Positions 4,367 to 63,587 of a stretch of 64,000 nucleotides of DNA are shown here, piece after piece. A model generated the notes under the pieces. The model was not told where the DNA came from and made no database searches. It worked only from the letters and a program-made list of their open reading frames with translations. This stretch comes from Macrostomum lignano (taxonomy: Eukaryota), in assembly GCA_002269645.1 (NCBI GenBank), contig NIVC01003111.1:54901-118900 (forward strand), read 5' to 3'. Position 1 is the first letter of the stretch; every line of letters begins with the position of its first letter. A program made the translations under genes and the position numbers.

Positions 4367-5545
4367 CTACGAAAAGCTGGCTAATGAATCGTCGTCTGAG
4401 TCCTCCCATCCGAGTGGCAGGCAGTCGAACGTGTAGTTCTCCCCATAGTTGCTGTCCCAGAACGTCTGCCCCAAGGTGTCGTAGCGAACGCAGAGCGCCG
4501 CTCGATCGCCCGCCCCTGTGCCGAAGCCGGGCGGCATTGGGATCCGGAAAGCGAACCTGTCAGTCATGTTGGCGGCTGTGTCCGATGCCTCGTAGACCGC
4601 TGGGACCTCGCTGCAGTTGTGCCAGCCGTCGAATGTGACTCGAACAGTTACTCGCTTCTCGAAGTGCAGGTTGCACACCCGGATGTGGCCGGACAGAACG
4701 CGGCTGCTCTGATCGAACGACTCCCTCTCGAGCATTATCTTCTGAGACATGACTCGTGAGATGAAGCCGGCGCAGCTTCCCGGCTGAGGAAAGCACGGAC
4801 TGACCAGGAGACGCCACCGAGACTGACCAGCAGATGCGGGAGCCAAAGAGTCTCGCCTGCATCCAAGTCGCCGAAGAGTCGGCTCCGTCTCAGTCGGTGC
4901 GTCGAAGTTAAATACGTGGCGTACCTTGATGAGATCCAAGCCAAGCGAGTCGGCGAATCGCACCGCCTTCTTGGCGCGTCGGCAACTGTCACTGTCGGTC
5001 AAGCAGCTGCTCCTCAGCGAAGAGCACCGCTTGACGGCCACCCGCGATGTCCAGGTCTCTTCATCCTCATCCAATACTTCGACCAGATCCGTATCTGCGG
5101 CTTCCGTGACGTCATCCTCGTCCAATACTTCCACCTGGTCCGTATCTGCGGCTTCCGTGACGTCATCCTCGTCCAATACTTCCACCTGGTCTGTATCTGC
5201 GGCTTCTGTGACGTCATCCTCGAACGGATCGACGTCGGTTTCCTCTTCGCTAGCTGTCTGATCGCAGCTCCGCTGCACCCAGCCGTCGACTTGAGCCGCG
5301 TTGTCGGAAGCGGATAGCTCGCGATTCGTACCGACCTCTTTGAGTCCGATTTCTCGGAATGCACGACTGAGGCTATCGCATACGCCGTCGTCGCTCCCAG
5401 ATTCCATGCTGTAGAAGCCAGATGATATTTGTCTCAGGTGCGACGGTGTTGACTTGTCGATGCAAACGGCCAAAATTTCTTTTGGCAGCGTCGATCCATC
5501 GTTTACACGAGTAGTGCCAGACTTTCTGGTGACTGTATCGTTCAT
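4367..5545 (-). CDS. Protein phosphatase 1 glycogen-targeting regulatory subunit (PPP1R3-like, CBM21), copy A, 392 aa
   Basis: RVxF-type motif KKAVRFADSLGLDL. CBM21 hallmarks LSGHIRVCNLHFEKRVTVRVTFDGW, TDRFAF and FWDSNYGENY. Three copies of a 17-aa acidic repeat. Single uninterrupted ORF. Confidence 0.9.
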   Translation of the reverse strand: MNDTVTRKSGTTRVNDGSTLPKEILAVCIDKSTPSHLRQISSGFYSMESGSDDGVCDSLSRAFREIGLKEVGTNRELSASDNAAQVDGWVQRSCDQTASEEETDVDPFEDDVTEAADTDQVEVLDEDDVTEAADTDQVEVLDEDDVTEAADTDLVEVLDEDEETWTSRVAVKRCSSLRSSCLTDSDSCRRAKKAVRFADSLGLDLIKVRHVFNFDAPTETEPTLRRLGCRRDSLAPASAGQSRWRLLVSPCFPQPGSCAGFISRVMSQKIMLERESFDQSSRVLSGHIRVCNLHFEKRVTVRVTFDGWHNCSEVPAVYEASDTAANMTDRFAFRIPMPPGFGTGAGDRAALCVRYDTLGQTFWDSNYGENYTFDCLPLGWEDSDDDSLASFS

Positions 5546-9733: not shown

Positions 9734-10855
9734 CTACGAAAAGCTTGCTAATGACTCGTCTGAGTCCTCCCATCCGAGTGGCAGGCAGTCGAACGTGTAG
9801 TTCTCCCCATAGTTGCTGTCCCAGAACGTCTGCCCCAAGGTGTCGTAGCGAACGCAGAGCGCCGCTCGATCGCCCGCCCCTGTGCCGAAGCCGGGCGGCA
9901 TCGGGATCCGGAAAGCGAACCTGTCAGTCATGTCGGCGGCTGTGTCCGATGCCTCGTAGACCGCCGGGACCTCGCTGCAGCTGTGCCAGCCGTCGAATGT
10001 GACTCGAACAGTTACTCGCTTCTCGAAGTGCAGGTTGCACACCCGGATGTGGCCGGACAGAACGCGGCTGCTCTGATCGAACGACGCCCTCTCGAGCATT
10101 ATCTTCTGAGACATGACTCGCGAGATGAAGCCGGCGCAGCCTCCCGGTTGAGGAAAGCACGGACTGACTAAGAGGCGCCGCCGAGACCGACCAGCAGATG
10201 CGGGAGCCAAAGAGTCTCGCCTGCGTCCAAGTCGCCGAAGAGTCGGCTCCGTCTCAGTCGGTGCGTCGAAGTTAAATACGTGGTGCACCTTGATGAGATC
10301 CAAGCCGAGCGAGTCGGCGAATCGCACGGCCTTTTTGGTGCGTCGGCTACTGTCGCTGTCAGTCGAGCAGCTGCTCCTCAGCGAAGAGCACCGCTTGACG
10401 GCCACCCGCGATGTCCAGGTCTCTTCGTCATCATCCAATACTTCGACCTGGTCCGTATCTGCGGCTTCCGTGACGTCATCCTCGTCCAATACTTCCACCT
10501 GGTCCGTATCTGCGGCTTCCGTGACGTCATCCTCGAACGGATCCACGTCCGTTTCCTTTTCGCTGGCTGTCTGATCGCAGCTCCGCTGCACCCAGCCGTC
10601 GACTTGAGCCGCGGTGTCGGAAGCGGATAGCTCGCGATTCGTACCGACCTCTTTGAGTCCGATTTCTCGGAATGCACGACTGAGGCTATCGCATACGCCA
10701 TCGTCGCTCCCGGATTCCATGCTGTAGATTCCGGATGATATTTGGCTCAGGTGCGACGTTGTTGACTTGTCGATGCGAACGTCCAGGGCGTTTCCCGACG
10801 GTAGCGCCGATCCATCGTTTTCGGTGACAGCCCGGCTGATGACTGAATCGTTCAT
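9734..10855 (-). CDS. PPP1R3-like glycogen-targeting subunit (CBM21), copy B, 373 aa
   Basis: Same RVxF and CBM21 motifs as copy A and highly similar CDS. Only two copies of the 17-aa acidic repeat. Confidence 0.9.
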   Translation of the reverse strand: MNDSVISRAVTENDGSALPSGNALDVRIDKSTTSHLSQISSGIYSMESGSDDGVCDSLSRAFREIGLKEVGTNRELSASDTAAQVDGWVQRSCDQTASEKETDVDPFEDDVTEAADTDQVEVLDEDDVTEAADTDQVEVLDDDEETWTSRVAVKRCSSLRSSCSTDSDSSRRTKKAVRFADSLGLDLIKVHHVFNFDAPTETEPTLRRLGRRRDSLAPASAGRSRRRLLVSPCFPQPGGCAGFISRVMSQKIMLERASFDQSSRVLSGHIRVCNLHFEKRVTVRVTFDGWHSCSEVPAVYEASDTAADMTDRFAFRIPMPPGFGTGAGDRAALCVRYDTLGQTFWDSNYGENYTFDCLPLGWEDSDESLASFS

Positions 10856-12344
10856 GTTTAGCTTGATTTGAAGTCGGACTGAAATTTGAATTGATGGGGC
10901 AGGTTGTTAATTATTCGCCAAGTAACCATTAAAAATTTCATTTTTTGACCTTTATAAGTTTCGCTTCCTACTTGAAGTAGTAAAAGTTGCGGCTTCCAGC
11001 TATTACTAATATTGTGTTGTGTTGCTGTTTTAGAGTACAAAATGTTGTTTTGACTAAGATTTTCTGTTGTGCAAATGTGAATTCACTGTTGTTCCGTGGC
11101 TACATTTGGTTGGGTTGGGAACAAATAGAGCCATTCTGCAACGTTCCAATCGTCCTCGCAGAAAACTGTACGAAAAGGTATTAGTAAATAATTTCTGTTT
11201 TTTTCAACGATAGGATAGACACTAATAATGGCTAAACGCTACAGCAAGATTATGACTGTCCTGGCTCCTACCTCATCAAGTGAAACGACCGAAGCTTCGC
11301 TTTCGATCCGAATGAGTAAGAGGAGACTTGTAAGTCGCGGCACAAGTTAATCAGTCTATACAAAAGCCTTCCCAGCTGCTAGGTATGAAAATCCTGCTTT
11401 TATATTTGTCGATGGTCGAGAGACGAGGTGTAGAAAAATGTGAGAGGTTGGGTCGGGGTGTCTCCCGATCCTGCACTGCCACGACGCGTGTACGCTGGGT
11501 GAGGGCGGCGTCGCCCGGTTCTGGCTGGGGCAGACCCAGCGATAAAAGGACGAGTGGACAGTATTATGCAGCCTAATCGACAGAGCGTTCTCTAAAACCT
11601 GTCCGCCATTGGCTGAGAGCATGGGTAAGGAGGGCGGGAATGCACATTGTGTATTTAGGGTTCAAACTGAGGTCGTTGGCAGCAGTAATAGCTGCCTTCC
11701 CTTACAACCTTTACTGTTAGTTATCTTTTCTGTGCCAGGGAGTTCCAAGGCAAGCCTTCTATGGAGTGACAAGGAGTCAGTTTAAAGCTGGCTGAACTCT
11801 TCCTAGAAGTTTCTGTCAGTTCTTTATCGCCTTTTTTCTAACCTTTATCAGTGTAAAATTAATATTTGAGAGCAACATTGAAGCGGTCTTTCACTCTACC
11901 ATTCAAGAACTCTTGTCTGTCCATTTAATGATTTCGAAATTCACCTTTTTTAGCACACAGAAACGGGAGAAAAATACATGGGACAAACTCTCGAACAGAA
12001 AAGCTAGAACTCGTTCACAATGACGACTCATTCTAAGGCAGCCAAAATTCTCCATCTTGTTAATTTTCAATGAATAATCTTTAATCTTGCCAAATCTCCA
12101 ACAAAACGAAGTTGCAATTCAGCAATTTTTTAATTGCTTGGCCCAACATTTATTCAGAGCCGGGGCTTCAGGGCCGCACACTGAGCACGAAAACTAATCA
12201 AAGGTGGCCTCTGTGGGTAGAAAGCAGTATCAACCGAGTAATGTGCTTGCAGAGCGAGGTCTGTGTGTGCATTTTAACTCATGCAAATAGAGATCAAACT
12301 TTGATTACTTTTTGATTTACTGATAGTACCTGAATTACCTACCG

Positions 12345-12675
12345 AGGACCACTAACCAGGGACCACTAACCAGTGACCAATATCAAAAAGGACCACTAAA
12401 AAGGACAACTAACCAAGGATCAGGGACCACTAACCAGAAACCAATAACAGGGACCACTAATCGGGACCACTAACCAGAGACCACTAACCAAGGACAACTA
12501 AACAGCAGGGACCACCAATCAGTGACAAATAACCAGGGGCCATTAACCAGTGATCATTAACCAGGGACCAGGGACTAGGGACCACTAACTAGTGATCAAT
12601 AATCAGGGACCACCATCCAGAGACCACTAACCAAGGACAACTAACCAGGGACCAGGGACCACTAACCAGTGACCC
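12345..12675. repeat. Degenerate short-period repeat built on ggaccactaacca
   Basis: Many imperfect copies of the ~13-bp motif are visible. Confidence 0.8.
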
Positions 12676-13987
12676 CCCACTGACAATTGCTTTCTACACC
12701 GGAACGGAGCAACGCAGACTCACAAACTTGCAAACTGGCCTAACATTCTGTTATGCACCTTATCAAACGATAATCAAGTCGCCAGCCTTCAACAAAGTCG
12801 AGAAATTCAACGATTCTGCCAGAAGTTCGGTTTTTTTACACAAGCGCTAATGAATTCAGTACACTCTTGTGCACCAGTGAGGCCTTGTCAGTCCCTCATA
12901 TTTCAGCAGTACGTCAACCACATGTGTCTGCATCATCAATAACTTTGGTGGCCCCAGGCCTTCAGTCAGGTGGAGCTCCTGGACCTTCAACAGGTGGCAC
13001 CAAGTGACCATGAACACCCTGTCCAATTTCTCTGATCAATCCTCGACAGTGGGCAAGTCGCAACTGCTAGAATTACTCAAATAGTCTCTCAAGCATTCGG
13101 TCATCACCTCGACACTTTGCATACGACAGTAAGAAAATCTAAACTACTCTGTTTCCCAGTCTCAGAGGTTGTCCGCGGCGTGTCTACCAGCCCGTCTGTC
13201 GCGACTCGCAACCCCTGGGCTGGTGATCTTGGGGTTGAGCATCAGCTACCGCTGTTTTCAAGTCATCACATGCTGATGTCGATCGCTAAGGCCAGCAGGA
13301 GTGACTGCACAGCTGTCATCGTGGCTCTTGAAGACATCCTTGGCTACTTTTTGAAAAGCCTCAGGTAAAAACCAGAAATGAAAATGGCTGGATATTCCTC
13401 CTGTGAAAATCTCACTAGTAGAATCTGGGGAAGCAGAGAACACTGCAAGTACTCGCAGCAGAAAAATGGCATGCATGCATATTCTGTTGCTATGGCTGGA
13501 ATCTTCGAGCCTTAGCCGGAATTAAACTTTTCTGTCGTTCTCTCTGCTAGAAGCAATCAAATCAAACTTAGACATATTTGTCTGGGCACACATGAAAACA
13601 TGATTAATTAGAAGAAGTTAATTTAGACTGGGTGAGTGAAGGTATGAATAGAGGTTGGAATCCCAAAAAAGTGCAGAGTGGAGTTTCCAGCTCCGATCAA
13701 ATTCAAGCAGCATTCTTGTCGGCAGTTTTTACTGCATACAACGATATTACGAGGCATGCTCGAAAACTCCTACTGTCAGTAGGGTAGGAAATTTCACGAA
13801 GTAGCTTCTTTAGCCAATCCAAATGGGAGCGTAATTAGAAATTTTATATTGATTGGGTCCACGGAGTTTCAATAGTACTCGTACCTCCTGGGATCAAGAA
13901 CTTCCAGTTAAAATACATAAGTATGCTTCTAGACCATAATAAATATTTGTTGGGTGACGCAAACGGTGATGGATGGGTGAGACAGTT

Positions 13988-14046
13988 CAACCCTGAGCTC
14001 GTGTCCTTCCGCGCCAAGCAGCAGGACTGCCAGCTGCGCCGCCAGC
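13988..14046 (+). other. Perfect 59-bp inverted copy of DEG/ENaC coding sequence 15262-15320
   Basis: caaccctgagctcgtgtccttccgcgccaagcagcaggactgccagctgcgccgccagc is the exact reverse complement of plus-strand 15262-15320. It is followed by cag|gtaaga. Confidence 0.95.
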
Positions 14047-14049
14047 CAG

Positions 14050-14345
14050 GTAAGACAGGTGAGACAGGTGAGACAGGTAATATTGGTCTGTGTACAGTTG
14101 GGATTGGTCTGTGCACAGGTGGGATTGGTTTGTGAACAGGTGGGATTGGTTTGTGAACAGGTGGGATTGGTTTGTGAACAGGTGGGATTGGTCTTTGCAA
14201 GGTGGATTTGGTTTATGCACAAGTGGGGGATTGGTTTATGCGCAGGTAGGATATGCCTGTATACTGGTGAGACTGCTGCACACAGGATAGATTGGTCTGT
14301 GCACAGGTAAGAAATGCCTGTATACAGGTGAGACTGATGCACACA
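14050..14345. repeat. ~21-bp degenerate minisatellite (acaggtgggattggtttgtga)
   Basis: Tandem array immediately downstream of the DEG/ENaC stop codon in minus-strand sense. Confidence 0.85.
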
Positions 14346-14374
14346 GGTCAGAGAGACGAAGCGGATTTCAGGTT

Positions 14375-17300
14375 TCAGGCTGGCGAGTCAGAGACGGTCC
14401 TCTTGTCGGTCCCAGCCGATGTCTCCTCCTTGCTGGTTGGCCGCAGGCATCTGGAAAATGAGAACCCGATGCGCAGCAGCAGCTCCAGCAGCTCAATCAT
14501 GGTGATGATGCTGGCACCGATCCAGAGTCCTGTACAAAGTTTGAATCAGTTTTCTGCCTATTAACAAACTGTTCAGTAAAAAACAGTGCAGTAAACCTAT
14601 GAGCATTGGTACCAACGATCCACCATGACAGAATGAGGACCCAGCTCACCCAGGATGCCGCCGAGGTCAGACAGCAAGTTCCGCAGGGGGTAGACCCAGT
14701 CCTCAATGTAGTGGTACGCTCCAGAGGCGGAAATGTGCAAATCCAGCAGGCTGAAGTACTGAAACTTCTCCGGCACTGGCCGATTCATCGCCGCACGCAG
14801 GCTGGCCAGAGTGGCATTATCAACGGACTCAGCCTTGGCTATCGCCCTGCTCAGAAACATGTCCATTGAACTCTGAAATGCTGTCACTGAGTAGCCTGCC
14901 GCCGAGTCCATCGGCCAGCGAGTGGCCATCACGGACGCGGGAAACTCGGAGCGCCGTCACAGCCGGTTGCAGTCGTCCGCTACGGTGCGGCCTCTCTGGA
15001 GACTCTCAACTCTGTCAAAACAGAGGGCAGCTAGACGCAGCTGCTCCCAGCGGGCCAAGTTTGCCTGGTAAAATTCCTCGAAGCTCTGCACAGTGCTTCC
15101 GTTCTTGATGGTCATGCTGGCCGAGGTGTTGGTTGGCGGCCGGATGTCAATGAAGAACATCGGCTCCCACATCTCGTGGCAGGGCCGGGCGGCCGGCATG
15201 AGGTCCGACGGGATGGGCAGGTGCTCCGCCAGGCAGCCGCATTCGTGTAGAAACTGCAGCTGCTGGCGGCGCAGCTGGCAGTCCTGCTGCTTGGCGCGGA
15301 AGGACACGAGCTCAGGGTTGCTGTTTGAGCGGCTGTAGTCGCTGACGTAGTCAACTATGCCCAGGTCCTCGCTGCACTCGTAGGCGTCGCGGTCAAGCTT
15401 TGTCTCGATCTTCTGGCTGACGTCGACGCTCAGTCGCTGCTGAAGCGGCACCGCAATGGCCGTGGCAGTGAAGGGATTCGCATCTGCCGGTGGAGGCGGG
15501 TGAGGCGGATGGAGTGAAGCTTGGAAAATGCAGAACGTTCAATGAATTAGAAAATGGAAGGCTTCATAATGGCGATGGAAGCGACCTTTGAAAACATAAG
15601 CAGTTTTACGTTAACTTAAGCTAATGACGTTTTGCATTTTGCTCAAGGTTTTTCTCAATATCATTGAGTGCCTCGGCTTCACTCAGACAATTAAATCTAT
15701 TTGCGTGCGGAAACAATTTTTAGCGAGTCCTTTGGACTTGAAGTTTCAAAAAGTTAGAGTGGGTACCTGTAACTCGTAAACAGCTTTCGTGTAAAGTATA
15801 AGATTCTAAAGTCGAAACCCGATTCGAACTCACTCGGCTCGTGCAGTGACACTGAAAATCCCGGGATGTGGTTGACCTCCTCCTCCTCGGTGAGGAAGCT
15901 GTTGGAGTTGGAGTATAGGATGAGGAACAGTCCGTTGCCCTCGCCAATTTGCAGGCCGTCACGATTTTTGGGCGTGAAGGTAAAGCAGAGAAACCTGATG
16001 GGGTCTTTGTAGACCCGGAAATCGTCGTAGGAGCACTCGCGGGAGTTGAACCGGCAGTACACTACCGTGTCCTTCAGGGTTTGAAATTGCTGCGACCTGT
16101 AGGCCACCTGCTTCAGCGAGTATTTGCCATCGTCGTACTCGCTGTAGGGATAGACGGGGATGTTTGTGTCGTTGTACTTGATGCGGTACCAGACTCGCGC
16201 CAGGTCGTACACCATGTCGTAGAGAGAGCGCCTGTCTTCGCCCGGCCCTGGAATGGGGTTGAACCGGTAGTCATAGTGGATATAGTCATTGGGGCAAATG
16301 GTCACCGACGGGAATTGGAAGTCATCCACGCCCTCGTAGTTCTCCGTGTTGACCGGGTACTCAGCGTAGCGAGTCAGAAGCTGGCCCAGGTGTATTAGGA
16401 ACCCGACAAAGGTGCCAAAAACTAGCAGCACCCACGCGAGCCGATATATCAGTGGGCCATCGTTCAGCCGGCGCACGCCGTGGATGGTCGTCTGGCTGAC
16501 GAAGGCGCGGCTAATCTTCCGGATCTCCGACATGGCGGCTGATTCGACTGCGAACAACTGTAACCCAGTGGGACAACCGTGTTGAATTCCTTTTATAGAG
16601 CTGGGATTGCCTTCTTTCTCGCTAATTATTGTGTTCAATTTACGCTGATGAAATGGGGTGGGGTGCGAGCGTCCTCTGACTGTGCCTGGTTTCATTTTGA
16701 AGATTGACCACCTGTGTCATCAGAGATCTGCAGACTGACGACTGCAGGAAGAATGAAAGAATGTTATGACATTGATCGTGGCACAGGTTTCTTAAAAAAC
16801 AGCTAATTGGCAGATGTGCAACCGACAGCTCAGCCGCAACTATTGCGCGGCGCATCTGAAGGCTGCGTACGGCTGTTCGGTCCAAAGACTGGGGAGTCGC
16901 CACACAACCTGAATTACCCCAGCTAATGCTGGCACCCATTTTACAGCTGAGTAATTTGAAGCAACACAGAGTTAAGTGTTTTGCTCAAGGACACAAATTG
17001 TCCCCAATGTGTCGAGAATCGAACCCCCGACCATTCAGTCGTGACTCCGACGCTCTAACCCCTAGGCCACAACCCCCTCTTTCACATTCACAGTGTGACA
17101 CAGTGATCTTCGCACTGTAACCGTGACACAGTAAAAGAGACGCACTGACTGTGACGCAGTGACAGTGACACAGCAATCATGACACCCACATAGAAGGTAA
17201 CAGTCGCAGTGACTGTAGTAATCGAGTAGAATTTGCTGAATAAGAAGTTAGCCTCCACTTGGGCATCGATTGCGATTTATATATTTGAGATCTAAGGGTT

Positions 17301-18835
17301 CGCTCAGAGATCAACGTGCACTTAGGTATTGTGAATGTACATTAGTTTGATGTACATTATAAATAGACGCTGGGCGCTGGGCGCTAGGTAGAATAGAGTA
17401 CATCTTCCCCTGCACGAATTTTCGAAGGAAATCAAAAGAAATGAAAGCGGCACTTAAAGAAGGCTCGTATTAGCCCAAAATAAATTAAAGGTTTATCATT
17501 AGTCCAATGCTGAATGAACACAGCGTACTATCGGTGATGAACAGCAGATTAGCTGGCGCGGCTCCCGTGTCGATGTTTGGGTTGCTGCGGTACGCGGCGA
17601 GCCAGTCTCGCAGCGCAACAATCCAGGCGGCTCCTTGAGCGCTGAAGGAGCGGAACAGATTGTTTAGGAGCCGCTTCATGCCCTCCACGATGCGCTGGGC
17701 CTCTGGATGCAGCTTGATCCGCTCGTGACCGATCCGCTGACTCGTGACGAATTGAATGAATACTTTTGAATAAAATGGCCGACCGCTGCCGGTCATGATT
17801 TGCTTCGGAATCCCGAACATAGCGAAGATCTGTTTATCTGTTTTAGCTGCTTGATCATGCCTTCAGCTGTAAGCGACTTCATTGCTACTATGATGGGGTA
17901 GCGCAAGTGCTAGTATCACGATGAAATGCCGACCGTTGACGGGCCCGATGAAATCGACACAGATGGTCGACCATGCCGACTTCGGTAGCGTGGATAGCGA
18001 CGGTTTGGCTGTTAAAACTTCTGTTTGGTGGTGGCTGAACGCTTGACCGAGTTGGTCAGTTGGAAGATTCTTGGAGTAGCTCTCCGGACACGTCAAAGTT
18101 CAGCTGCTTTGATTCGGCCAGCGCTGCCAATTCTGCCGATGTGCGTCTTCCTTTTCGGCCCGAATTTCTCACTCGTCACCCTCCCCAGGATGGTGACGCC
18201 CTGGTTGCGCATCACTGTGAAGTCGACCATGTACTTCGAGCCGCCGACGTTGACCAGGAGCTTAGCCCTGCCGGCAGTTTCCAGGGGCGACCGAGAGCCG
18301 AAAGGATAAAGCCGCCTTGTTGGCAGCCGAAGTGGCGTCTTAGCAGTCTTGATCTCCTGAAAGGTCGCCATGTCGATGACGTTGCAGCTGGCGCCACTGT
18401 CGATGAGGGCTTCCAGCCGCTTGCCGTTGGCTGAGACTGTCAGCAGCGGCAGTTCATATGTGGCCAGACAGTGACCGAGAAACTTGTGGCATACAATTTT
18501 GCTCAATAATTTTGAATTACAAAAATATTTCTAATTTGAAAATAAGAGTTAAAAATTTAATTTCTACTAAAAGTAGATGTTTAAGCATTCGGATTTTTTT
18601 TAAGATTCTGCTAAATTAACCTTTCGCATCTCTTGTAGTCATAAGCTTGAAAGTGATAAGTGCTCGCGTGATACAAAATTTTTATAAGCTAAATGGGTTG
18701 CTAATTTATCTTCTTTAAAATATGAGTAGTTTTTTTGAACGTACTTCTCCCTGTAGAATTATTTAGATGAAGCCCTCACTGATCGATAGGCAGGCCTTTG
18801 CTTACCTTGGCCAGGTTCGCCTTTCGTTCGGCCAT
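14375..18835 (-). CDS. DEG/ENaC (ASIC/FaNaC-like) sodium channel subunit, 4 exons, ~580 codons, with one in-frame TGA at 14957-14959
   Basis: Exons 18835-18806, 16557-15834, 15483-14650 and 14529-14375, all GT/AG and phase-consistent. Motifs: pre-TM1 TTIHG, TM1, FPSVTICP, Cys-rich thumb (ECGC), TRWP, and TM2 LSDLGGILGLWIGAS with the GAS filter. The first exon has an acceptor at 18937, so the 5' end may extend further. Confidence 0.88.
16803..17076 (-). mobile_element. tRNA-derived CORE-type SINE, copy 1 (in DEG/ENaC intron 1)
   Basis: On the minus strand: A box TGGCCTAGGGG, B box GGTTCGATTC, then gtccttgagcaaaacacttaac...ctgtaaaatggg resembling the MIR/CORE domain. A second copy lies at ~32424-32745. 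Confidence 0.85.
17490..18506 (-). pseudogene. Decayed Gypsy pol remnant: aspartic protease joined directly to a frameshifted integrase, RT/RNase H absent
   Basis: Protease motif LEALIDSGASCNVI (ORF 18093-18506). Integrase pieces WSTICVDFIGP and FGIPKQIMTGSG...WIVALRDWLAAYRSNP..TGAAPANLLF. An 8-bp duplication (aaacagat) and other frameshifts are present, and the second catalytic Asp is replaced by Gly. Confidence 0.8.
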
Positions 18836-19575: not shown

Positions 19576-20140
19576 TAGACAGAACATACTCGTACAGAAA
19601 TCACAAGATGCATTTCATTGGCGAGTTGAGTCAGAGCTCAGATGAAGGCCAATGCCGAGCCACATCTCAAACGATAGCACTGCACGCTTCAATCATAGAT
19701 TCTGAGCACTGAACTTCAGGCCACAATATTATTTAGAAGGGAGCCAGACTCGGGGAAGATTGATTTGCCATTAATCCCCAATCCCCATGGAATTGCCACC
19801 GGCCGGCCATCCGGTAATAATTAATTTGGACTGCAGCTGAGTTCCGCACCTACGATTGGATTGGAGAAGATGAACAAAAATTAGCCATTGAATTGTGCCA
19901 ATTGTTTGCAATCTGCCGTCCAGCTCTGGAATCGAGGGAGTTTGAACAAACTGACAATATTTAGCTAAGTGCAGCAGTGCTCAGCCTGAGAGGGGAGCAC
20001 TGGCACTGGGCATGTGGGATGAAAGTATGCACTGTGAGGGGTGGACAAATGCTCTACCAGATTCAATTCTCCCACTAACTGAAAGAAAAGAAAGCAATAT
20101 AATAAATATGATCATTGCATTCCTGTTCCGAGGTAGGTTG

Positions 20141-20659
20141 GATTAGCAATTCGTTCTATTCCTGCACCCATGATGGGCTAGATTAGCAATCCGTTCTATT
20201 CCTGCACCCATGATAGGCTAGATTAGCAATCCGTTCTATTCCTGCACCCATGATAGGCTAGATTAGCAATCCATTCTATTCCTGCACCCATGATAGGCTA
20301 GATTAGCAATCCATTCTATTCCTGCATCCATGATAGGCTAGATTAGCAATCCATTCTATTCCTGCATCCATGATAGGCTAGATTAGCAATCCATTCTATT
20401 CCTGCACCCATGATAGGCTAGATTAGCAATCCATTCTATTCCTGCATCCATGATAGGCTAGATTAGCAATCCATTCTATTCCTGCATCCATGATAGGCTA
20501 GATTAGCAATCCATTCTATTCCTGCATCCATGATAGGCTAGATTAGCAATCCATTCTATTCCTGCATCCGTGATAGGCTAGATTAGCAATCCATTCTATT
20601 CCTGCATCCGTGATAGGCTAGATTAGCAATCCGTTCTATTCCTGCATCCATGATAGGCT
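20141..20659 (+). repeat. 40-bp minisatellite, left arm (13 units), interrupted by the LTR element and resuming at 25374-25486
   Basis: Unit gattagcaatccattctattcctgca(c/t)ccatgataggcta. The array resumes in register after the element. Confidence 0.95.
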
Positions 20660-21025: not shown

Positions 21026-22009
21026 TTAATAATAAATGTAATGATTATGGCGTCGGAATTGGACTTGGCGGCCGCTAGAGGTCGCTCTAGGAGGTGATGA
21101 GTCCACCGGTTCCTTTGGTTTGGCGGCTTTTTCCGGAAGCGAGTTCGCGGCCGGCTGAACAGACGACTTCGGAAGCGAAAGTCGCGCCGGCTTGAGGCGA
21201 TCGATAGAGACAGATTCGGTGTTGCCTGACGGTAGGAAAATAACGAAGAACTTGTCAGTTCGCTGTTTCACGCGATACGGCCCTGAGTACGGCGCCTCGA
21301 GCGGCGACCGCACGCGATCGGCCCGAACCCAGACGAATTCAGCCATTTCCAGGTCCTTGGGTACGTAGCTCCGTGGTTCGTGCGTCTTCGCGTGTGGACT
21401 CGGTAACTCTGTCAGCAGTTCCTGCAGCCGTGTCCGAATGTCCGTTGGGGCGAGTGGTTCAGAAGTTAGGATGCGCGGAACCATCGGAAGCTCGCCGGTA
21501 ACCCTGGTGAACGGTGATATTCCTTGGTCGTCAGGTGCGACGTGCATCGCGAGGAGAGCCACAGGTAGGTCTGTCAGCCAGTCATTGCCTCGAGCACGTA
21601 GCATCGTCTTCAGGGTGCGATGGGCTCGCTCGACCTTGCCATTGGTTTGAGGGTGGTAGGCCGTTGTGCGTAATCGATGAAAACCAATTGATGACGAGAC
21701 CGAGTGAAAGAATTCTGATTCGAACTGGCGCCCCCGATCAGTGATTACATACAGTGGCACTCCGTAGCGCGAGACCCAAGACGAGACGAATGCATGGGCG
21801 ACTACTTCCGCGGTTATTGATTCCAGTGGTGTAGCTTCTAGCCAGCCAGTCGAGCGGTCGACCATCGTGAGAAGGTAGCGGGCAGACTGGTGGCCAAAGG
21901 TGGTAGCATTAGCTGGTGGAAGTGGTCCCACAATATCGATGTGTACCGCCTCAAAGCGATTTGATGGTAATGAGAAGGCCTGTTGCGGGGAGACAGTGTG
22001 GCGAGTGAC
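21026..22009 (-). CDS. Gypsy integrase core and C-terminus, separated from pol by an in-frame TAA
   Basis: In frame with pol after CQRS-TAA-VTRH. D,D,E motifs HIDIVGP, VITDRGRQFES and KVERAHRTLK are intact. LEAPYSGPY (GPY/F) present. Confidence 0.9.
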   Translation of the reverse strand, partial: VTRHTVSPQQAFSLPSNRFEAVHIDIVGPLPPANATTFGHQSARYLLTMVDRSTGWLEATPLESITAEVVAHAFVSSWVSRYGVPLYVITDRGRQFESEFFHSVSSSIGFHRLRTTAYHPQTNGKVERAHRTLKTMLRARGNDWLTDLPVALLAMHVAPDDQGISPFTRVTGELPMVPRILTSEPLAPTDIRTRLQELLTELPSPHAKTHEPRSYVPKDLEMAEFVWVRADRVRSPLEAPYSGPYRVKQRTDKFFVIFLPSGNTESVSIDRLKPARLSLPKSSVQPAANSLPEKAAKPKEPVDSSPPRATSSGRQVQFRRHNHYIYY

Positions 22010-24232
22010 TTAACTCCGTTGGCAGTCCTGGCAGTTCCAGCAGTAGGTCTTGATGGACTTGCGCATTCCGGGCCAAAAGTAACGTTCTGTGATGAGTTTT
22101 GCTGTTTTACGGTAGCCGAAATGACCAAGTCGATGGAAGGAGGCAATCACGGCGTCGCGGAGGGACGGCGGAATGATCGGGCGAGGATACGGCGTTGACG
22201 TCTCACACCAAACGACGATGTCTTTGTCCAGAGAATACGATCGAATATTTGGTGCAGCTGAGAACGACTCCGGTCGTTGTGCTTCAGCGATACTAGGCAG
22301 ATCAAAAGGGAATTGGCTTGATGGGGCAGCGACTACAGCGACTGTTGCGATGTTGGACACGTGATCATTCACTGGGATGTCAGGCAGTCGAGAAAGGGCA
22401 TCAGCTATTACGTTGTCTGCACCGCGAATGTACTGGACATCTGCCACGTACTCGGACAAGATGGTCAAGTAGCGCTGATTGCGATCTGACGTAGTGGTGC
22501 GATTGGCGTGGAAGGCCTGAGCTAGTGGTTTATGATCGGTGAACAAGGTCACGCTCAGTCCTTCAATGAGGCTGCGGAAGTGCAACACTGCCAGGTACGC
22601 CGCGAGTAGTTCTCGGTCGAACGTGCTGTACATCCTTTGAGATGACGACAACTTCTTGCTGAACATGCCAAGAGGTGACGTTCCGGTTGAAGAGGTTTGA
22701 TGCAGAACGGCACCAACACAGTCGGCTGAGGCATCAGTGTACAGGTGGTACGCAGTACAGTTGGGGTCCGGATGATGCAGCAGTAGTCTCTCTGAGAGAG
22801 CTTGTTTGATGTTTTCGAAAGATTTCTGATGCTGCTCTGTCCATTGGAAGTTTCCTGCTGACTGTAGTGATGCAGTGAGTAGGTCTTGCAGCGGACAGAT
22901 GCGGTCGGCAAAGTTGGGAACGAATCGACGGTAGAAACCGACGACACCGAGGAAGCGCCGAAGTGCGTTCGAATCCGTGGGTGTCGGCCAGTCAGTGATT
23001 ATTTTGATCTTCTTCTGGAGAGGCTTTATTCCTTCAGGAGTCACGCGATGGCCAAGGAAATCTACCTCGGACTGAAAGAATTCGCACTTCTTCAAATGAA
23101 CCTGTAGGCCGTGTGTTCTTAGGCGGTCCAAAACTTGTTCCAAATGCGAGTAGTGGTCCTCACGAGTCTTTGAGAATATCAGGACATCATCGATGTAAGA
23201 GATGACGAATGACAGTCCGTGAAAAACAGAGTCGATGAAGCGTTGAAATGTTTGTGCTGCATTCCTCAGGCCGAAGGGCATGCGTGTGTACTCGAACAAT
23301 CCAAACGGTGTGGTGATAGCGGTTTTGCAAATATCCTCTTCGGCGACTGGAATTTGATGAAAGGCGCGAACAAGGTCTAACTTTGAAAACACAGTGCTTC
23401 CGTGTAGGTACCGAGTGAAGGTTTGAATGTGTGGAACCGGATAGTTGTCCGGCTTTGTTCGTTTGTTCAATTCGCGATAGTCACCGCACGGACGCCAGCC
23501 AGCTCCCTTGGGTGCCATGTGGAGGGGTGACGCCCAAGCGCTTGAGGAAGGTCTGAGGTAGCCAGCATCGATTAGCTGCTGAAACTCCTGCTTTGCAGCC
23601 TGTAGTTTTGCAGGGTGCAGTTGCCGGGGTCGCAAGTGAACCGGTTGTCCACTGCCAGTGTCTAGCCGGTGAACAGTGTCATGCTTGACCTCTGAAGCTG
23701 GCGGAAGGGCTCCGCCTTCAACGAAAGAAAAACAATCTGCAAACTTTGTCAACAGCGTACTCGTCCGAGAATCCAGGTTGGGTGGCAGTTCTACCGACAC
23801 AGTGAATGGGCCACAATGAACATTTGAAATTGACAAAGTAACAGTAGACAGTCCTGTTTCTGAGTCTCGAACGTGTTTGCGCTGACAATCGACAACTAAC
23901 CCATGGTGAGCCAAGAAATCGTAACCAATGATGGGTTTCACCACTGACGCCACGAGGAAGGTCCACTTGAAGGCGCGACGCAAACCGCGGATTGAGACAT
24001 CCAGTAGGACCGACCCGCGAACTGGTATGGCGGCTCCGATAGCAGTAATTAAACGAACGTTTGTATCTTGAACGAGTGCGTTAACGAGGTGAGGTGGAAC
24101 AATGGAAACCGAGGCTCCAGTATCCACAAGAAACTTGCTGTAGGTATTGTTGATTTTAACATCTAACTCCAAACAGGTGGTCGATGGTATCTCGGCACTG
24201 CGCACCGCGACCTCGGTCGCAGTGCGACTTAG
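22010..24232 (-). CDS. Gypsy pol (protease, reverse transcriptase, RNase H, integrase zinc finger), -1 frame relative to gag
   Basis: [10 protein letters not shown] protease, [31 protein letters not shown] motif, LYTDAS and FTDHKPL RNase H, HRLGH...CQDC zinc finger. Confidence 0.95.
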
Positions 24233-25134
24233 TTTTCCGGCTGTCGAGAAGGTGATGATGAACGCGACTGAGATGGCGTTTTTTCATTGGGATGCAGCAC
24301 TCGGATCGGACGCGAGCTGTCCTTGGGAAACTGGCACCAGGGGCGACACGACCGAGCACGGCGGCCATAGTAGAGGTGTGAGCGGCAAACGAAGGGGCGT
24401 TGGCCAGGCTTAAATGGGTCTGTTCCAGTGGGCTTACCAGGTGCTTGTCGGTGTGGAGCTTGCTCAAAGCGCTGTTGGGGTGTCCGATCTGCACCGGCCT
24501 GCTGAATTGGGCAAACTGTCGCTGGCGATGGAGAGCTAAGGCCTCTGACGATCAACATCGAGTCAGCAATCTCGGAAATTTGCTGGGATGACTGCTGTTG
24601 GAATCCCGACAGTGCGATACGAAGGTCCTGTGGAAGACAGCGCATCAGAGTGGCCTTGAGGAGTTCCTCGTCGGGCTGTATCTGGCACTGCTCCATCTTG
24701 CTCCGGAGTTTGCGCATGAAGATTGATGGCTTGTCTCCTCCGAGGTCCGAGACTTGCAATACTTTCGAAAACTTCTCCTGCTTGGACTTTTGCAGAGTCG
24801 ATGTAATCGCTGTTTTCAGTTGTTCGTACTGTTTTGGAGTCTGAGCGGACAAGTGCAGAGCCGCGATATCCTCCGGTAGATGAGAGACTAGGTGGTAAAA
24901 TTTGGCGGTCTCGTTGGCCACCCTGTTGAGCATAAACTGGGCCTCCAGCGTGAGGAACCATGCTTCCGGGTTGTTGCGATAGAAGATTGGAAGCTTCAGG
25001 TGGGCCAGGGAGACTGAAGCGGTGTCGGCGGCGTTTCCTACTGCATGTGTAACCACTGGTGCGGCCGAACTTGGTGCGGCTTGCGTGGTTGTAGGTGGTG
25101 TAGGAGCGGAATTGTTGCTTGCACTGTCCGTCAT
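24229..25134 (-). CDS. Gypsy gag, 301 aa
   Basis: [22 protein letters not shown], typical of this Gypsy gag class. Ends CCG GAA AAC TAA directly over the pol frame. Confidence 0.9.
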
Positions 25135-25728: not shown

Positions 25729-26445
25729 GCAGGAATAGAATGGATTGCTAATCTAGCCTATCATGGGTGCAGGAATAGAATGGATTGCTAATCTAGCCTA
25801 TCATGGATGCAGGAATAGAATGGATTGCTAATCTAGCCTATCATGGGTGCAGGAATAGAATGGATTGCTAATCTAGCCTATCATGGATGCAGGAATAGAA
25901 TGGATTGCTAATCTAGCCTATCATGGGTGCAGGAATAGAATGGATTGCTAATCTAGCCTATCATGGATGCAGGAATAGAATGGATTGCTAATCTAGCCTA
26001 TCATGGATGCAGGAATAGAATGGATTGCTAATCTAGCCTATCATGGATGCAGGAATAGAATGGATTGCTAATCTAGCCTATCGTGGATGCAGGAATAGAA
26101 TGGATTGCTAATCTAGCCTATCATGGATGCAGGAATAGAATGGATTGCTAATCTAGCCTATCATGGGTGCAGGAATAGAATGGATTGCTAATCTAGCCTA
26201 TCATGGATGCAGGAATAGAATGGATTGCTAATCTAGCCTATCATGGGTGCAGGAATAGAATGGATTGCTAATCTAGCCTATCATGGCTGCAGGAATAGAA
26301 TGGATTGCTAATCTAGCCTATCATGGGTGCAGGAATAGAATGGATTGCTAATCTAGCCTATCATGGATGCAGGAATAGAATGGATTGCTAATCTAGCCTA
26401 TCATGGATTGCTAATCTAGTCCATCATGGATTGCTAATCTAGCGT
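25729..26445 (-). repeat. 40-bp minisatellite, right arm (about 17 units), inverted relative to 20141-20659
   Basis: Unit aggaatagaatggattgctaatctagcctatcatgg(g/a)tgc is the reverse complement of the left-arm unit. Confidence 0.95.
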
Positions 26446-26684
26446 GCTTGAAAGCATTTGCAATTTTTCACCTTCCACTCTCTCCAGTCACCAACCTGAT
26501 CTACCGCTAATACAAATCATCATCTCACTGCATCTCGCTGTTCTCACCAGCTTCCCATTGGCTCCAGGGCTCTCAGCCAGCCTGGGCTGTCCATATCGAG
26601 ACGGGAAAATCCGGCGTGTTTAAAATTAGCCAAGCCACGCGCCCCAAACCGAGCGAGCCGCAGTTCAGTCGGCAACAGCAGGAC

Positions 26685-36820
<10,136 letters not shown>

Positions 36821-40402: not shown

Positions 40403-59500
<19,098 letters not shown>

Positions 59501-61344: not shown

Positions 61345-61779
61345 CTACTCCTGCAGAGCCGCGCCATGCGACGGGCTTCCGTCTCGCTTGCCTAACAGGC
61401 GCTGATAAACTCGCTTCTTGCCCAGGAGGCCGCGGTATCCAGCTCGCTTTCCGAGCAGGCCTCGGAATCCAGCTCGCTTTCCGAGCAGGCCGCGATATCC
61501 AGCTCGCTTTCCGAGCAGGCCGCGATATCCAGCTCGCTTTCCGAGCAGGCCGCGGAATCCAGCTCGCTTTCCGAGCAGGCCGCGATATCCAGCTCGCTTT
61601 CCTAGAAGGCGATGGTAAGGGCCTCGCTTGCCCAACAGGCCGTAGTAAGCGCCTCGCCGTTCAACAGAGCTGAGCTCATCGTTGTCGTCTTCTCGGGCAT
61701 CGCAGCAGCCAATCAGGGCGCCCAGCAGCAGGCAGCACTGCACCGCCATGACAAGGCGGAACAGCTTCAGAGTCAGCAT
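61345..61779 (-). CDS. Neuropeptide precursor, 144 aa, nine amidated peptides ending in LL-amide
   Basis: Signal-peptide-like MLTLKLFRLVMAVQCCLLLGALIGCCDA, an acidic spacer, then G-KR-delimited GAYYGLL, GPYHRLL, AGYRGLL x4, AGFRGLL x2 and VYQRLL. The ATG is preceded by acceptor ctgcag|G. Confidence 0.92.
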   Translation of the reverse strand: MLTLKLFRLVMAVQCCLLLGALIGCCDAREDDNDELSSVERRGAYYGLLGKRGPYHRLLGKRAGYRGLLGKRAGFRGLLGKRAGYRGLLGKRAGYRGLLGKRAGFRGLLGKRAGYRGLLGKKRVYQRLLGKRDGSPSHGAALQE

Positions 61780-63587
61780 CCTGCAGACAGTTTTAGAAAG
61801 ATCAAATTGATTATTTTTAATGCTGGACAAAAAAGAAATCGTTAAATGAATTTGAGTCCGTCTGCTAAACCCTGCTCTCTGTCTATCTCTCTTCTCTCAA
61901 TTCTTATTCTGCGCAAAAATTCGTTATTAAATTCAATATCAAGGCGGGACTGGTCACTGGAGAGATGGAGAGAGATCACAAGCCAAGGATCAGGGGAACC
62001 TGCACTAGCAGGCTGCTCTCATCTTTCTGCCAGACAGAGGGATCTCGCTCTCTGGAGTCGCGTAATACAATTGATTCGCCACTCCGGGCTACAGATATCC
62101 ATTCGGGAACTTATATTGGGTGGTGCTCAGTGTCCCGCCCAAACTTGCCAATGCTCAGTGGAATGCATTACACTCCTAGTGATGGTAGGAGGCACAGTGC
62201 TACGCAAAAGTGCTCGAGTCTGCTACTGGTGGATACTGATACCGCCGCTGTATTTACACGAGGGGCCCGTTCTGAAGGAACAATGCCCTTCACCAAACAA
62301 ACAGGCACCACTCAAAATGAGCCCTGAGAGTGCGTACTTATCAATCGTACTTTTAAATTTCGAACAAGCTGCATAGCAAATTCGAATTAGTCAAGCCTGG
62401 CTTTTACTAGCGAATTCCTAAGTTTGGCTTGCAAGAAAGACAAACTCAGCTTGTCTTTGAAGACAGCTCTGAGATCAAGGGACGCTGCAGATAAGTTAAA
62501 GCAGCTGGACTTCACGTGCATTGTATCAGTCGTGAACTTGTGGTCTGCTCGCGAAAGCAAGTTCAGCACGCCGTGAAGAGCGAGATAGAAGGCGCCTTCC
62601 CCTGCGTCCCCTGTGTCGGGTCGGATCTGGACCTCTGCAGTTAAATCAAAGTCAATCAATCAGCAACATTAAAAACCGCCACCCTGTACGCCTGAGCGAG
62701 AGTTAGAAAACATTGCATCAATTGCAGTTGCAGGGCCAAAGTGTACCGGTAGGGTGGCGGTTTTCAATGCTGCCTGGTGTCAATGAGGCGGTTATAAAAA
62801 TCGATATCTCACTAGAAGCCAGAGCGAGTGGTAAAATGAAGGATAGAGTGGCGGCTCCCCCACCACTCAGATTTCTCGCGCCGTTCCCCAACCCCCCTCC
62901 GCCAGTCTGCCCGCCCCGAATTTCTCTGCCCCCCAAGTGCGCTCACGACACCCTTAACCTCTTTCCCGATTGTACATTGCTAATTTTACATTGCTACAAG
63001 CACTGTCGTCTGTCTCGTCTTGTCTGTCTTTATCATTTAGGCGTTAACGCTGTTTCTTGCTGCTCCCACAAATCATTGGCTAGAGTTCGCCAATTTTGCC
63101 TAAATCACACCACCAAGATGCATCGGCCATCCGACATGAAAGCGGTCTTTTCTATTTCGTTTCGTTTCTTTATTTTTGTCACGACGACTTTCTTAGTCAT
63201 TTCCATTTCTTCAGTTCACCCTCACTTGTCTCTGTTTACTCTGTTTTCTCTCTCTCTCTGTCTCTCTCTTGTCTAATTCGATCTTGTTATTATTATCTCT
63301 CTCCCTCGCCGCCTTCTGATTGGCTCTCCATTCTTGCCTCTACTTAGTAGCGCACTCCACCCTTTTTTAATTATTCTGACTCAACCCCCTTAAGTTAATG
63401 TCTTATACATAACTGGTTTGGGCCCTGTGGCCTCACCCACTTCTCTTACTATTCAATTTAACTCTAATTTAAATCTATATAATATTCTCTTAATTTAGAT
63501 TGGTTTATTTAGTATTTCTTAACTGGGCGCATGCGAGAGGTAATGTAGGAGAGAAAGGAGTAAAGTAAGAAAGAGGGATAGGAGGGT

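What the first reader, a model, noticed from the sequence alone, without database searches (positions are those of the whole stretch)
14957..14959. In-frame UGA exactly at the conserved last thumb cysteine of an otherwise intact DEG/ENaC channel
Seen: exon 3 reads ...DDCNRL-TGA-RRSEFPASVMATRWP and continues in frame through TM2 and the GAS filter, with all splice sites intact and no other lesion found in ~580 codons. Known: in chicken ASIC1 the motif is YCVCEMPC, where C366 pairs with C291 and C360 pairs with C313. Here the C313 and C360 equivalents appear to be lost together (DCQLRR, ADDC), the C291 equivalent (AYEC) is kept, and its partner is the TGA. Inference: most likely a recent TGY>TGA null allele or a base-call error. 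UGA recoding (Sec, or Cys/Trp readthrough) at a disulfide position would be new for this family. I saw no convincing SECIS by eye. The stop is ~310 nt upstream of the last junction, so it is NMD-competent.
Basis: partly seen in the sequence, partly recalled or inferred. Interest (0 to 1): 0.7.

Follow-up and report, generated by a model that had tools for sequence, protein, structure and literature searches.

The report
Premature stop in flatworm sodium-channel gene
A flatworm DEG/ENaC ion-channel gene that is otherwise intact has one stop codon (TGA) where every relative has an essential cysteine, and the evidence points to an ordinary knockout mutation or a base error, not selenocysteine or another special decoding.

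Summary
A three-exon DEG/ENaC gene lies on the minus strand (ATG 16533, stop 14377-14375, 562 codons). It has a single in-frame TGA at 14959-14957, which is codon 409.

In an alignment with 66 homologues that column is Cys in all 64 that have a residue there. It is the last Cys of the thumb/palm C-x-C-x3-C motif (chicken ASIC1 C366). Its partner Cys (codon 270) is kept. The closest relatives are Macrostomum lignano paralogues. One of them reads CTG TGC CGG where the window reads CTG TGA CGG, so a single C>A change explains the stop.

Nothing supports recoding:
- No SECIS was found by Rfam or by two scans of my own.
- There is no unusual RNA structure around the site.
- No in-frame cryptic intron with a GTRAG donor spans it.
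- No homologue is truncated at this position.

Thirteen of the 36 one-step routes to TGA in this gene start from Cys codons, so a TGA on a conserved Cys is not surprising.

The rest of the gene shows no decay. The lesion is therefore young, or it is a consensus base error. Reads and orthologues could not be reached. Verdict: an ordinary nonsense allele or young pseudogene (or an assembly error), of low interest.

The parts
15834..16533 (-). Coding exon A of the DEG/ENaC gene. It holds the ATG at 16533-16531 in a gccgccATG context, the HG motif, TM1, FPSVTIC, the finger and part of the palm.
   Evidence: Pfam ASC. 44-45% identity to M. lignano paralogues. The donor G|GTGAGT is at the same position and phase as in the M. 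lignano paralogue.
15484..15833 (-). Intron 1 (350 nt, GTGAGT...CCGGCAG, phase 1).
   Evidence: Position conserved in L001.
14650..15483 (-). Coding exon B: the thumb and palm regions. It contains the in-frame TGA.
   Evidence: tblastn with M. lignano paralogues covers 15457-14495.
15374..15376 (-). TGC, codon 270 (AYEC). This is the equivalent of cASIC1 C291, the expected disulfide partner of codon 409. It is retained.
   Evidence: Invariant Cys column. The C291-C366 pairing is taken from PMC2701601.
14969..14971 (-). TGC, codon 405. This is the Cys four residues before the TGA, equivalent to cASIC1 C362.
14957..14959 (-). In-frame TGA, codon 409, context CTG TGA CGG. It sits in the column of the invariant last Cys of the C-x-C-x3-C motif (cASIC1 C366).
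   Evidence: Cys in 64/64 homologues. The M. lignano paralogue has CTG TGC CGG.
14530..14649 (-). Intron 2 (120 nt, GTGAGC...TGTACAG, phase 1). It splits GILG|LWIGAS.
   Evidence: Same position and phase in the M. lignano paralogue.
14375..14529 (-). Coding exon C: TM2 with the G-A-S filter (14518-14510), a short C-terminal tail and the terminal TGA at 14377-14375.
   Evidence: Conserved GG..GLW.G.S..E columns are all present.
14047..14347 (.). Tandem repeats with 9-, 21- and 61-nt periods, starting about 30 nt after the stop codon. They lie in the presumed 3' UTR or flank.
13988..14046 (.). Inverted, 100% identical copy of 59 nt of exon B (15262-15320, codons NPELVSFRAKQQDCQLRRQ), about 330 nt downstream of the stop. 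A side observation, not shown to be linked to the TGA.

Best explanation
The TGA is an ordinary stop codon. It was created by a single-base substitution, most likely TGC>TGA (C>A on the coding strand), in the codon for the last thumb/palm cysteine of a Macrostomum-type flatworm DEG/ENaC channel gene.

The copy in this assembly is therefore a null allele or very young pseudogene of one member of a large, lineage-expanded paralogue family. Translation would end at codon 409. The product would be a 408-residue protein with TM1 and most of the ectodomain, but without the last palm strands, TM2 and the GAS filter, so it cannot form a pore. The mRNA may also be degraded by nonsense-mediated decay.

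Shown: the position of the stop, the invariance of Cys in that column, the intactness of everything else, and the absence of recoding signals. Inferred: that the base is real, not a consensus error, and that the lesion is recent.
For: - There is a single internal stop in 562 codons. Both introns have consensus splice sites at positions and phases shared with a M. lignano paralogue.
- The column is Cys in 64/64 homologues.
- The paralogue codons are CTG TGC CGG and the window has CTG TGA CGG. Eleven of the 12 remaining Cys codons in the gene are TGC.
- 13 of 36 one-step routes to TGA in this CDS start from Cys codons.
- The query departs from the consensus at 6 of 42 family-conserved columns. 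Its annotated (full-length) paralogues depart at 6 and 7, so there is no further decay.
- No SECIS was found, and no significant local RNA structure (z = 0.36 and -0.72).
- No in-frame cryptic intron with a GTRAG donor spans the site.
- No homologue is truncated at this site.
- C291A and C366A abolish ASIC1 opening (PMC2701601), so Trp or Arg inserted by leakage would not rescue function.
- Another ORF in the window, a retroelement pol, also carries a lone in-frame stop (TAA, CQRS*VTRH). Point nonsense lesions therefore do occur in this region.
- The locus lies among retroelement fragments and satellites.
Against: - No reads, haplotypes or orthologues could be reached, so a consensus error cannot be excluded.
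- The complete lack of any second lesion means the gene was under constraint until very recently. That fits an error or a functional recoded gene just as well.
- A TGA aligned to Cys with conserved sequence downstream is also the classic signature used to discover selenoproteins.
Confidence: 0.62

Rival explanations
1. Assembly or base-call error. The organism's real gene has TGC (or TGT) here and encodes a normal full-length channel. The A at 14957 (coding strand) is a consensus or polishing artefact.
For: - Everything else in the gene is intact and as conserved as in annotated (full-length) paralogues.
- A single base restores the L-C-R codons seen in the M. lignano paralogue.
- The same region holds a perfect 59-nt inverted duplication, which could hint at local assembly problems.
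Against: - Substitution errors are the rarest error type in polished long-read assemblies (general knowledge).
- The site is not in a homopolymer or a repeat.
- Nothing here can test it.
Confidence: 0.25
2. UGA recoding as selenocysteine, or SECIS-dependent Cys insertion. The channel would carry a selenylsulfide in place of the C291-C366-type disulfide.
For: - The TGA is exactly in an invariant Cys column, with conserved in-frame sequence, TM2 and GAS downstream.
- This is the comparative signature of a Sec codon.
Against: - No SECIS_1 or other SECIS hit at E<=10 anywhere in the 64 kb window on either strand.
- No hits in strict and lenient kink-turn/AA-loop pattern scans of 6 kb downstream, where shuffles gave means of 0.23 and 1.15 hits.
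- No structured element next to the UGA.
- None of 164 retrieved family members has U/X or ends at this position.
- The library search found no report of Sec in this family.
- The gene's own terminator is also UGA.
Confidence: 0.03
3. Leaky termination, or programmed readthrough of UGA-C by a near-cognate tRNA (Cys, Trp or Arg), yields some full-length protein.
For: - The stop context is UGA followed by C. From general knowledge of eukaryotic termination this is the leakiest tetranucleotide, and Cys is one of the residues inserted at UGA by near-cognate decoding.
Against: - No downstream stimulatory structure or known readthrough motif.
- Basal readthrough is normally well under a few percent.
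- Trp or Arg at this position would be non-functional, to judge from the dead C366A mutant of ASIC1.
- There is no comparative evidence.
Confidence: 0.06
4. A-to-I RNA editing converts UGA to UGG (Trp) in the transcript, perhaps helped by double-stranded RNA formed by the 59-nt inverted repeat.
For: - A perfect 59-bp intramolecular duplex could form between exon B and the 3' flank if both are transcribed.
Against: - The TGA lies about 300 nt outside that duplex, and no complementary sequence to the TGA region exists nearby.
- Local folding is no better than shuffled sequence.
- The A has a 5' G, which from general knowledge is the neighbour ADAR enzymes disfavour most.
- Trp would not replace a disulfide Cys.
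Confidence: 0.01

Closest known systems
Macrostomum lignano DEG/ENaC paralogues (e.g. PAA66556.1 / BOX15_Mlig005363g2; UniRef A0A1I8GJ89 C-terminal half)
   Same: - 44-45% identity in exon A and 31-38% overall.
- The same two intron positions and phases.
- The same reduced cysteine pattern: the C313/C360-type pair is missing and the motif is C-x3-C-x4-Y...WP.
- The same codons around the site, L-C-R.
   Different: - They have TGC (Cys) where the window has TGA.
- They are too diverged to be the same gene. No orthologue was found.
FMRFamide-gated sodium channels (FaNaC; PDB 7yvb, 8on7) and ASIC/ENaC
   Same: - Best solved-structure matches, with profile E-values of 1.7e-56 and 6.1e-53.
- Full-length ASC architecture, HG motif, FPxxTxC, GxS filter.
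- The TGA column aligns with the last Cys of their C-x-C-x3-C motif.
   Different: - The flatworm clade lacks one of the thumb disulfides.
- Tested M. lignano relatives of FaNaC did not respond to FMRFamide (PMC9234716), so the ligand is unknown.
Unprocessed (duplicated) pseudogenes and segregating nonsense alleles in expanded gene families
   Same: A single disabling substitution in a gene that keeps its introns, splice sites and all family motifs.
   Different: No second lesion is present, and it is not known whether the allele is fixed.
Eukaryotic selenoprotein genes (a Sec-UGA aligned with Cys in homologues, plus a 3'-UTR SECIS)
   Same: UGA aligned with Cys and conserved coding sequence downstream.
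   Different: - No SECIS was detected.
- There is no evidence that the UGA is conserved in relatives.

Membership tests
DEG/ENaC (Pfam ASC, PF00858) | Full-length match to the family profile | tested here: met
   E=1.3e-50, residues 11-528, profile positions 1-455 of 455. PDB profile hits to FaNaC, ASIC and ENaC.
DEG/ENaC (Pfam ASC, PF00858) | N-terminal HG motif, TM1, post-TM1 FPxxTxC, TM2 with the GxS filter and the GG..GLW motif | tested here: met
   H18, G19, W34, F74, P75, T78, C80, G508, G509, G512, L513, W514, G516, S518 and E524 all match the conserved columns.
DEG/ENaC (Pfam ASC, PF00858) | The conserved ectodomain cysteines of its clade are all encoded | tested here: not met
   Eleven invariant Cys codons are present. 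The twelfth, codon 409, is TGA.
DEG/ENaC (Pfam ASC, PF00858) | Uninterrupted reading frame (a functional gene) | tested here: not met
   One in-frame TGA at 14959-14957.
Eukaryotic selenoprotein gene | In-frame UGA aligned with Cys (or Sec) in homologues, with conserved sequence downstream | tested here: met
   Cys in 64/64 homologues. TM2 and GAS are conserved downstream.
Eukaryotic selenoprotein gene | SECIS element in the 3' UTR | tested here: not met
   Rfam at E<=10 on 11500-15200 and on the whole window gave no SECIS family hit. Two custom scans of 14956-9000 gave 0 hits. SECISearch3 itself was not available.
Eukaryotic selenoprotein gene | UGA conserved in orthologues, or Sec/Cys alternation across species | not testable with these tools
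   No orthologue could be reached. No retrieved homologue ends at this site.
Programmed stop-codon readthrough | Leaky stop context | tested here: inconclusive
   UGA-C is a weak terminator context (plus general knowledge), but this is common by chance.
Programmed stop-codon readthrough | Stimulatory downstream RNA structure or motif | tested here: not met
   Fold z-scores of 0.36 (103 nt) and -0.72 (301 nt).
A-to-I recoding site | The edited A lies within a double-stranded RNA formed with a complementary sequence | tested here: not met
   The only inverted repeat (59 nt) lies about 300 nt away. Nothing pairs with the TGA region.
Processed (retro-copied) pseudogene | Lack of introns, poly-A tract, flanking duplications | tested here: not met
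   Two introns are retained at ancestral positions.

The most novel reading that the evidence does not exclude
The UGA is decoded as selenocysteine, or as Cys by a SECIS-independent or unrecognised recoding signal. That would make this the first DEG/ENaC channel with a Sec/selenylsulfide at a structural disulfide position. The evidence does not strictly exclude this, because SECIS detection is imperfect, the 3' UTR is unmapped, and no orthologues or expression data were available.
Probability: 0.03. Interest if true: 0.8.

Novelty: already known. Interest (0 to 1): 0.12.

Why it matters
If the base is real, this is one more null allele or young pseudogene in a large flatworm DEG/ENaC family. 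It is useful for annotation: the locus should be flagged as a pseudogene or low-quality protein and not silently "fixed". It has little biological consequence otherwise.

It would matter only if the UGA were conserved and decoded. That would add an ion channel to the selenoproteome and place Sec in a gating-critical disulfide. Nothing found here points that way.

Tried and rejected
**Searches for close relatives or the same gene elsewhere**
- The search for homologous proteins with the spliced protein and with exon A found no hits; the call with a 7-sequence profile returned only two hits, both distant (23% identity, and 53% over 6% of the query). None of the three calls returned the M. lignano paralogues that share a 15-residue identical stretch, so its word index seems not to cover them.
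- Exact-protein look-ups of seven window ORFs in the contig index and nine in the cluster table were all absent, so the organism's own data are not in these collections.
- Two exact-pattern scans of the metagenome contigs around the TGA gave no matches.

**Recoding and escape routes rejected**
- Selenocysteine: no SECIS.
- RNA editing: no duplex at the site.
- Splicing around the stop: 60 in-frame GT..AG pairs span it, but none has a GTRAG donor, and any of them would delete conserved residues.
- A changed genetic code or a suppressor tRNA. The gene's own terminator is TGA, the other broken ORF in the window has TAA, and no tRNA gene was found in the window.
- A processed pseudogene: the introns are retained.

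**Not decided**
- Species identity was not established. The relatives and a shared satellite family at about 70% identity point to a Macrostomum-like flatworm that differs from the deposited M. lignano proteins.

Full report
**What is in the sequence**

On the minus strand, 14959-14957 is TGA in the frame ...GAC GAC TGC AAC CGG CTG TGA CGG CGC TCC GAG TTT CCC..., which reads DDCNRL*RRSEFPASVMATRWP.

I rebuilt the gene. The ATG is at 16533 in a gccgccATG context.
- Exon A is 16533-15834 and ends before a GTGAGT donor.
- Exon B is 15483-14650. It follows a pyrimidine-rich ...ccggcag acceptor and ends before GTGAGC.
- Exon C is 14529-14375 and ends in TGA.

The three exons (700 + 834 + 155 nt) join in frame to give 562 codons. 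The only internal stop is codon 409. The protein matches Pfam ASC (PF00858) over the whole profile at E=1.3e-50. No second DEG/ENaC gene is present in the window.

**Relatives**

An exhaustive HMMER search with exon A found 437 family members. The six best are all from the flatworm Macrostomum lignano or unnamed, at 42-47% identity. The window therefore comes from a Macrostomum-like flatworm. None of the window ORFs I looked up exists in the protein collection, so it is not the deposited M. lignano annotation. A satellite in the window (20133-20654 and 25734-26443) is about 70% identical to one next to a M. lignano paralogue, which fits a related but distinct genome.

The best solved-structure relatives are the FMRFamide-gated channels (7yvb, 8on7), followed by ENaC and ASIC.

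**The TGA column**

In a MAFFT alignment of the query with 66 full-length homologues, the column holding the TGA is Cys in all 64 sequences with a residue there. The local pattern in the nearest paralogues is:
- C-LSE-C-EQRKY...WP
- C-PVL-C-RVKSH...WP
- C-PLK-C-NNTRY...WP

The window reads C-NRL-*-RRSEF...WP.

Profile alignment to FaNaC and ENaC-gamma places this column on the last Cys of their C-x-C-x3-C motif. In chicken ASIC1 numbering, which I took from memory and checked for arithmetic consistency, this is C366. It pairs with C291. A paper in the library confirms the C291-C366 bond and shows that C291A and C366A each abolish channel opening (PMC2701601).

The C291 equivalent (AYEC, codon 270, 15376-15374) is retained. 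The C313/C360-type pair is missing, but it is missing in all the close, annotated (full-length) M. lignano paralogues too. That loss is a clade trait and not a sign of decay. The only corrections are to exon and codon numbering.

**Is the rest of the gene decaying?**

No. At 42 columns that are at least 80% conserved across the family, the query differs at 6, one of which is the TGA itself. Its annotated (full-length) paralogues P0001 and P0002 differ at 6 and 7. All the other invariant Cys, the HG motif, FP..T.C, GG..GLW.G.S..E and the GAS filter are present.

I fetched one M. lignano paralogue locus (L001, NIVC01001550.1). Both introns of the window gene sit at the same codon positions and phases as in that paralogue: LH-x-x|G-intron and GILG|LWIGAS. 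That supports the gene model.

The paralogue's codons at the site are CTG TGC CGG. The window has CTG TGA CGG. Eleven of the gene's 12 remaining Cys codons are TGC. A single C>A transversion is the simplest history.

**Is a TGA on a conserved Cys remarkable?**

I enumerated all single-base changes that create a stop in this CDS. Cys codons supply about 6-7% of all nonsense routes, but 13 of the 36 routes to TGA. Eleven of the 12 remaining Cys codons, and the TGA column itself, are family-invariant positions. A random new TGA therefore falls exactly on a conserved cysteine roughly one time in three. The coincidence that makes the site look like a Sec codon is weak evidence.

**Tests for recoding**

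Selenocysteine:
- Rfam covariance models at E<=10 on 11500-15200, and then on the whole window on both strands, gave no SECIS family hit. At gathering thresholds there were no RNA families at all.
- My own scans for an NUGA...AA...GA kink-turn hairpin across 6 kb downstream of the TGA found nothing. The strict version gave 0 hits against a shuffle mean of 0.23. The lenient version gave 0 against 1.15.
- None of the 164 retrieved family proteins contains U or X, and none ends just before this Cys.
- The paper library holds no report linking Sec to this family.

Readthrough:
- The context UGA-C is a weak terminator.
- The 103-nt and 301-nt regions around it fold no better than shuffles, with z = 0.36 and -0.72.
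- Only Cys insertion would give a working channel.

Editing:
- The only inverted repeat near the gene is about 300 nt away from the TGA. Nothing pairs with the TGA region.
- The A follows a G, a poor ADAR context (general knowledge).

Other routes:
- Splicing around the stop: no in-frame GT..AG pair with a GTRAG donor spans the stop.
- Altered code or suppressor tRNA. The gene ends in TGA itself, no tRNA gene lies in the window, and the other broken ORF nearby has TAA.

**Context**

The gene sits among retroelement remnants (17485-18506) and a nearly complete LTR-type element (gag, PR-RT-RH-IN; 21026-25134). The pol of that element has a single in-frame TAA at 22012-22010.

Immediately after the stop codon come tandem repeats of 9-, 21- and 61-nt periods (14047-14347). 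After those comes a perfect inverted copy of 59 nt of exon B (13988-14046 versus 15262-15320). No AATAAA or ATTAAA occurs within 2.2 kb of the stop, so the 3' end is undefined.

These features show a dynamic, repeat-rich neighbourhood. They are compatible with a gene that has recently become dispensable, and also with local assembly difficulty.

**Conclusion**

The most likely reading (about 0.6) is a real, recent TGC>TGA nonsense substitution. It would give a null allele or young unprocessed pseudogene of one paralogue in a large flatworm DEG/ENaC family. The product would be truncated before the last palm strands and TM2, so it would be non-functional. With an exon junction 307 nt downstream, the mRNA is a possible NMD target.

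A consensus base error (about 0.25) cannot be separated from this without reads. Functional recoding (Sec, Cys or readthrough) has no support beyond the position of the codon (under 0.1 in total).

**What could not be done**

I had no access to reads, to transcript data, or to an orthologue. The three word-indexed protein searches and the exact look-ups gave nothing useful. SECISearch3 itself was not available.

Noticed in passing
window 13988-14046 and 15262-15320: A perfect 59-nt inverted repeat. A piece of exon B (codons NPELVSFRAKQQDCQLRRQ) is copied in reverse orientation about 330 nt downstream of the gene's stop codon. It occurs only twice in the window. If it is co-transcribed it would form a 59-bp perfect RNA duplex with a 1.2-kb loop, a possible source of siRNA. 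It could also be a recent template-switch event or an assembly artefact.
   Followed up: partly
window 14047-14347: Tandem repeats with periods of 9, 21 and 61 nt begin about 30 nt after the channel gene's stop codon. No AATAAA or ATTAAA lies within 2.2 kb downstream, so the 3' UTR end is unclear.
   Followed up: partly
window 21026-25134 (minus strand): An LTR-retrotransposon-like element with gag (DUF7041), protease, RT, RNase H and integrase. The pol frame is continuous except for one in-frame TAA at 22012-22010 (CQRS*VTRH), between the integrase zinc finger and the core domain.
   Followed up: partly
window 17485-18506 (minus strand): Fragments of another retroelement (an aspartyl protease ORF and an integrase-like ORF) lie only about 1 kb upstream of the channel gene's ATG. 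In addition, 16805-17000 is 91% identical to 32506-32703.
   Followed up: no
window 4367-5545 and 9734-10855 (minus strand): Two tandem single-exon paralogues of 392 and 373 aa with a C-terminal CBM_21 carbohydrate-binding module, resembling the glycogen-targeting subunit of protein phosphatase 1. Both have acidic DEDDVTEAADTDQVEVL repeats.
   Followed up: partly
window 61345-61830 (minus strand): An ORF with a signal-peptide-like start and about nine repeats of xGYRGLLG/xGFRGLLG, each followed by KR. It looks like a neuropeptide precursor that would yield ...RGLL-amide peptides. It has no Pfam hit.
   Followed up: no
window 43309-44007 and 54102-55250 (plus strand): Two related ORF groups resembling KY (kyphoscoliosis peptidase/transglutaminase-like) proteins. 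The first hits Pfam Ig-like_KY at 4e-23. They are probably exons of two paralogous genes.
   Followed up: partly
window 56219-56469: Sub-threshold Rfam hits to plant miRNA precursor models on both strands (MIR6450, 43 bits, E=1.5e-05, below the gathering score). This indicates a long, near-palindromic hairpin and is unlikely to be a member of those families.
   Followed up: no
window 20133-20654 and 25734-26443; L001 17-1374: A satellite array in the window is about 70% identical to a satellite next to a M. lignano DEG/ENaC paralogue (contig NIVC01001550.1). This suggests a repeat family shared between related flatworm genomes.
   Followed up: partly
window 26500-32500 and 46000-51000: Long minisatellite and microsatellite arrays with strong strand skew give spurious long ORFs in several frames, for example (CTGT...)n read as LSVC repeats, and 21- to 30-nt units. 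An exon resembling a zinc-transporter (cation efflux) segment, [20 protein letters not shown], lies near 31700-31800.
   Followed up: no
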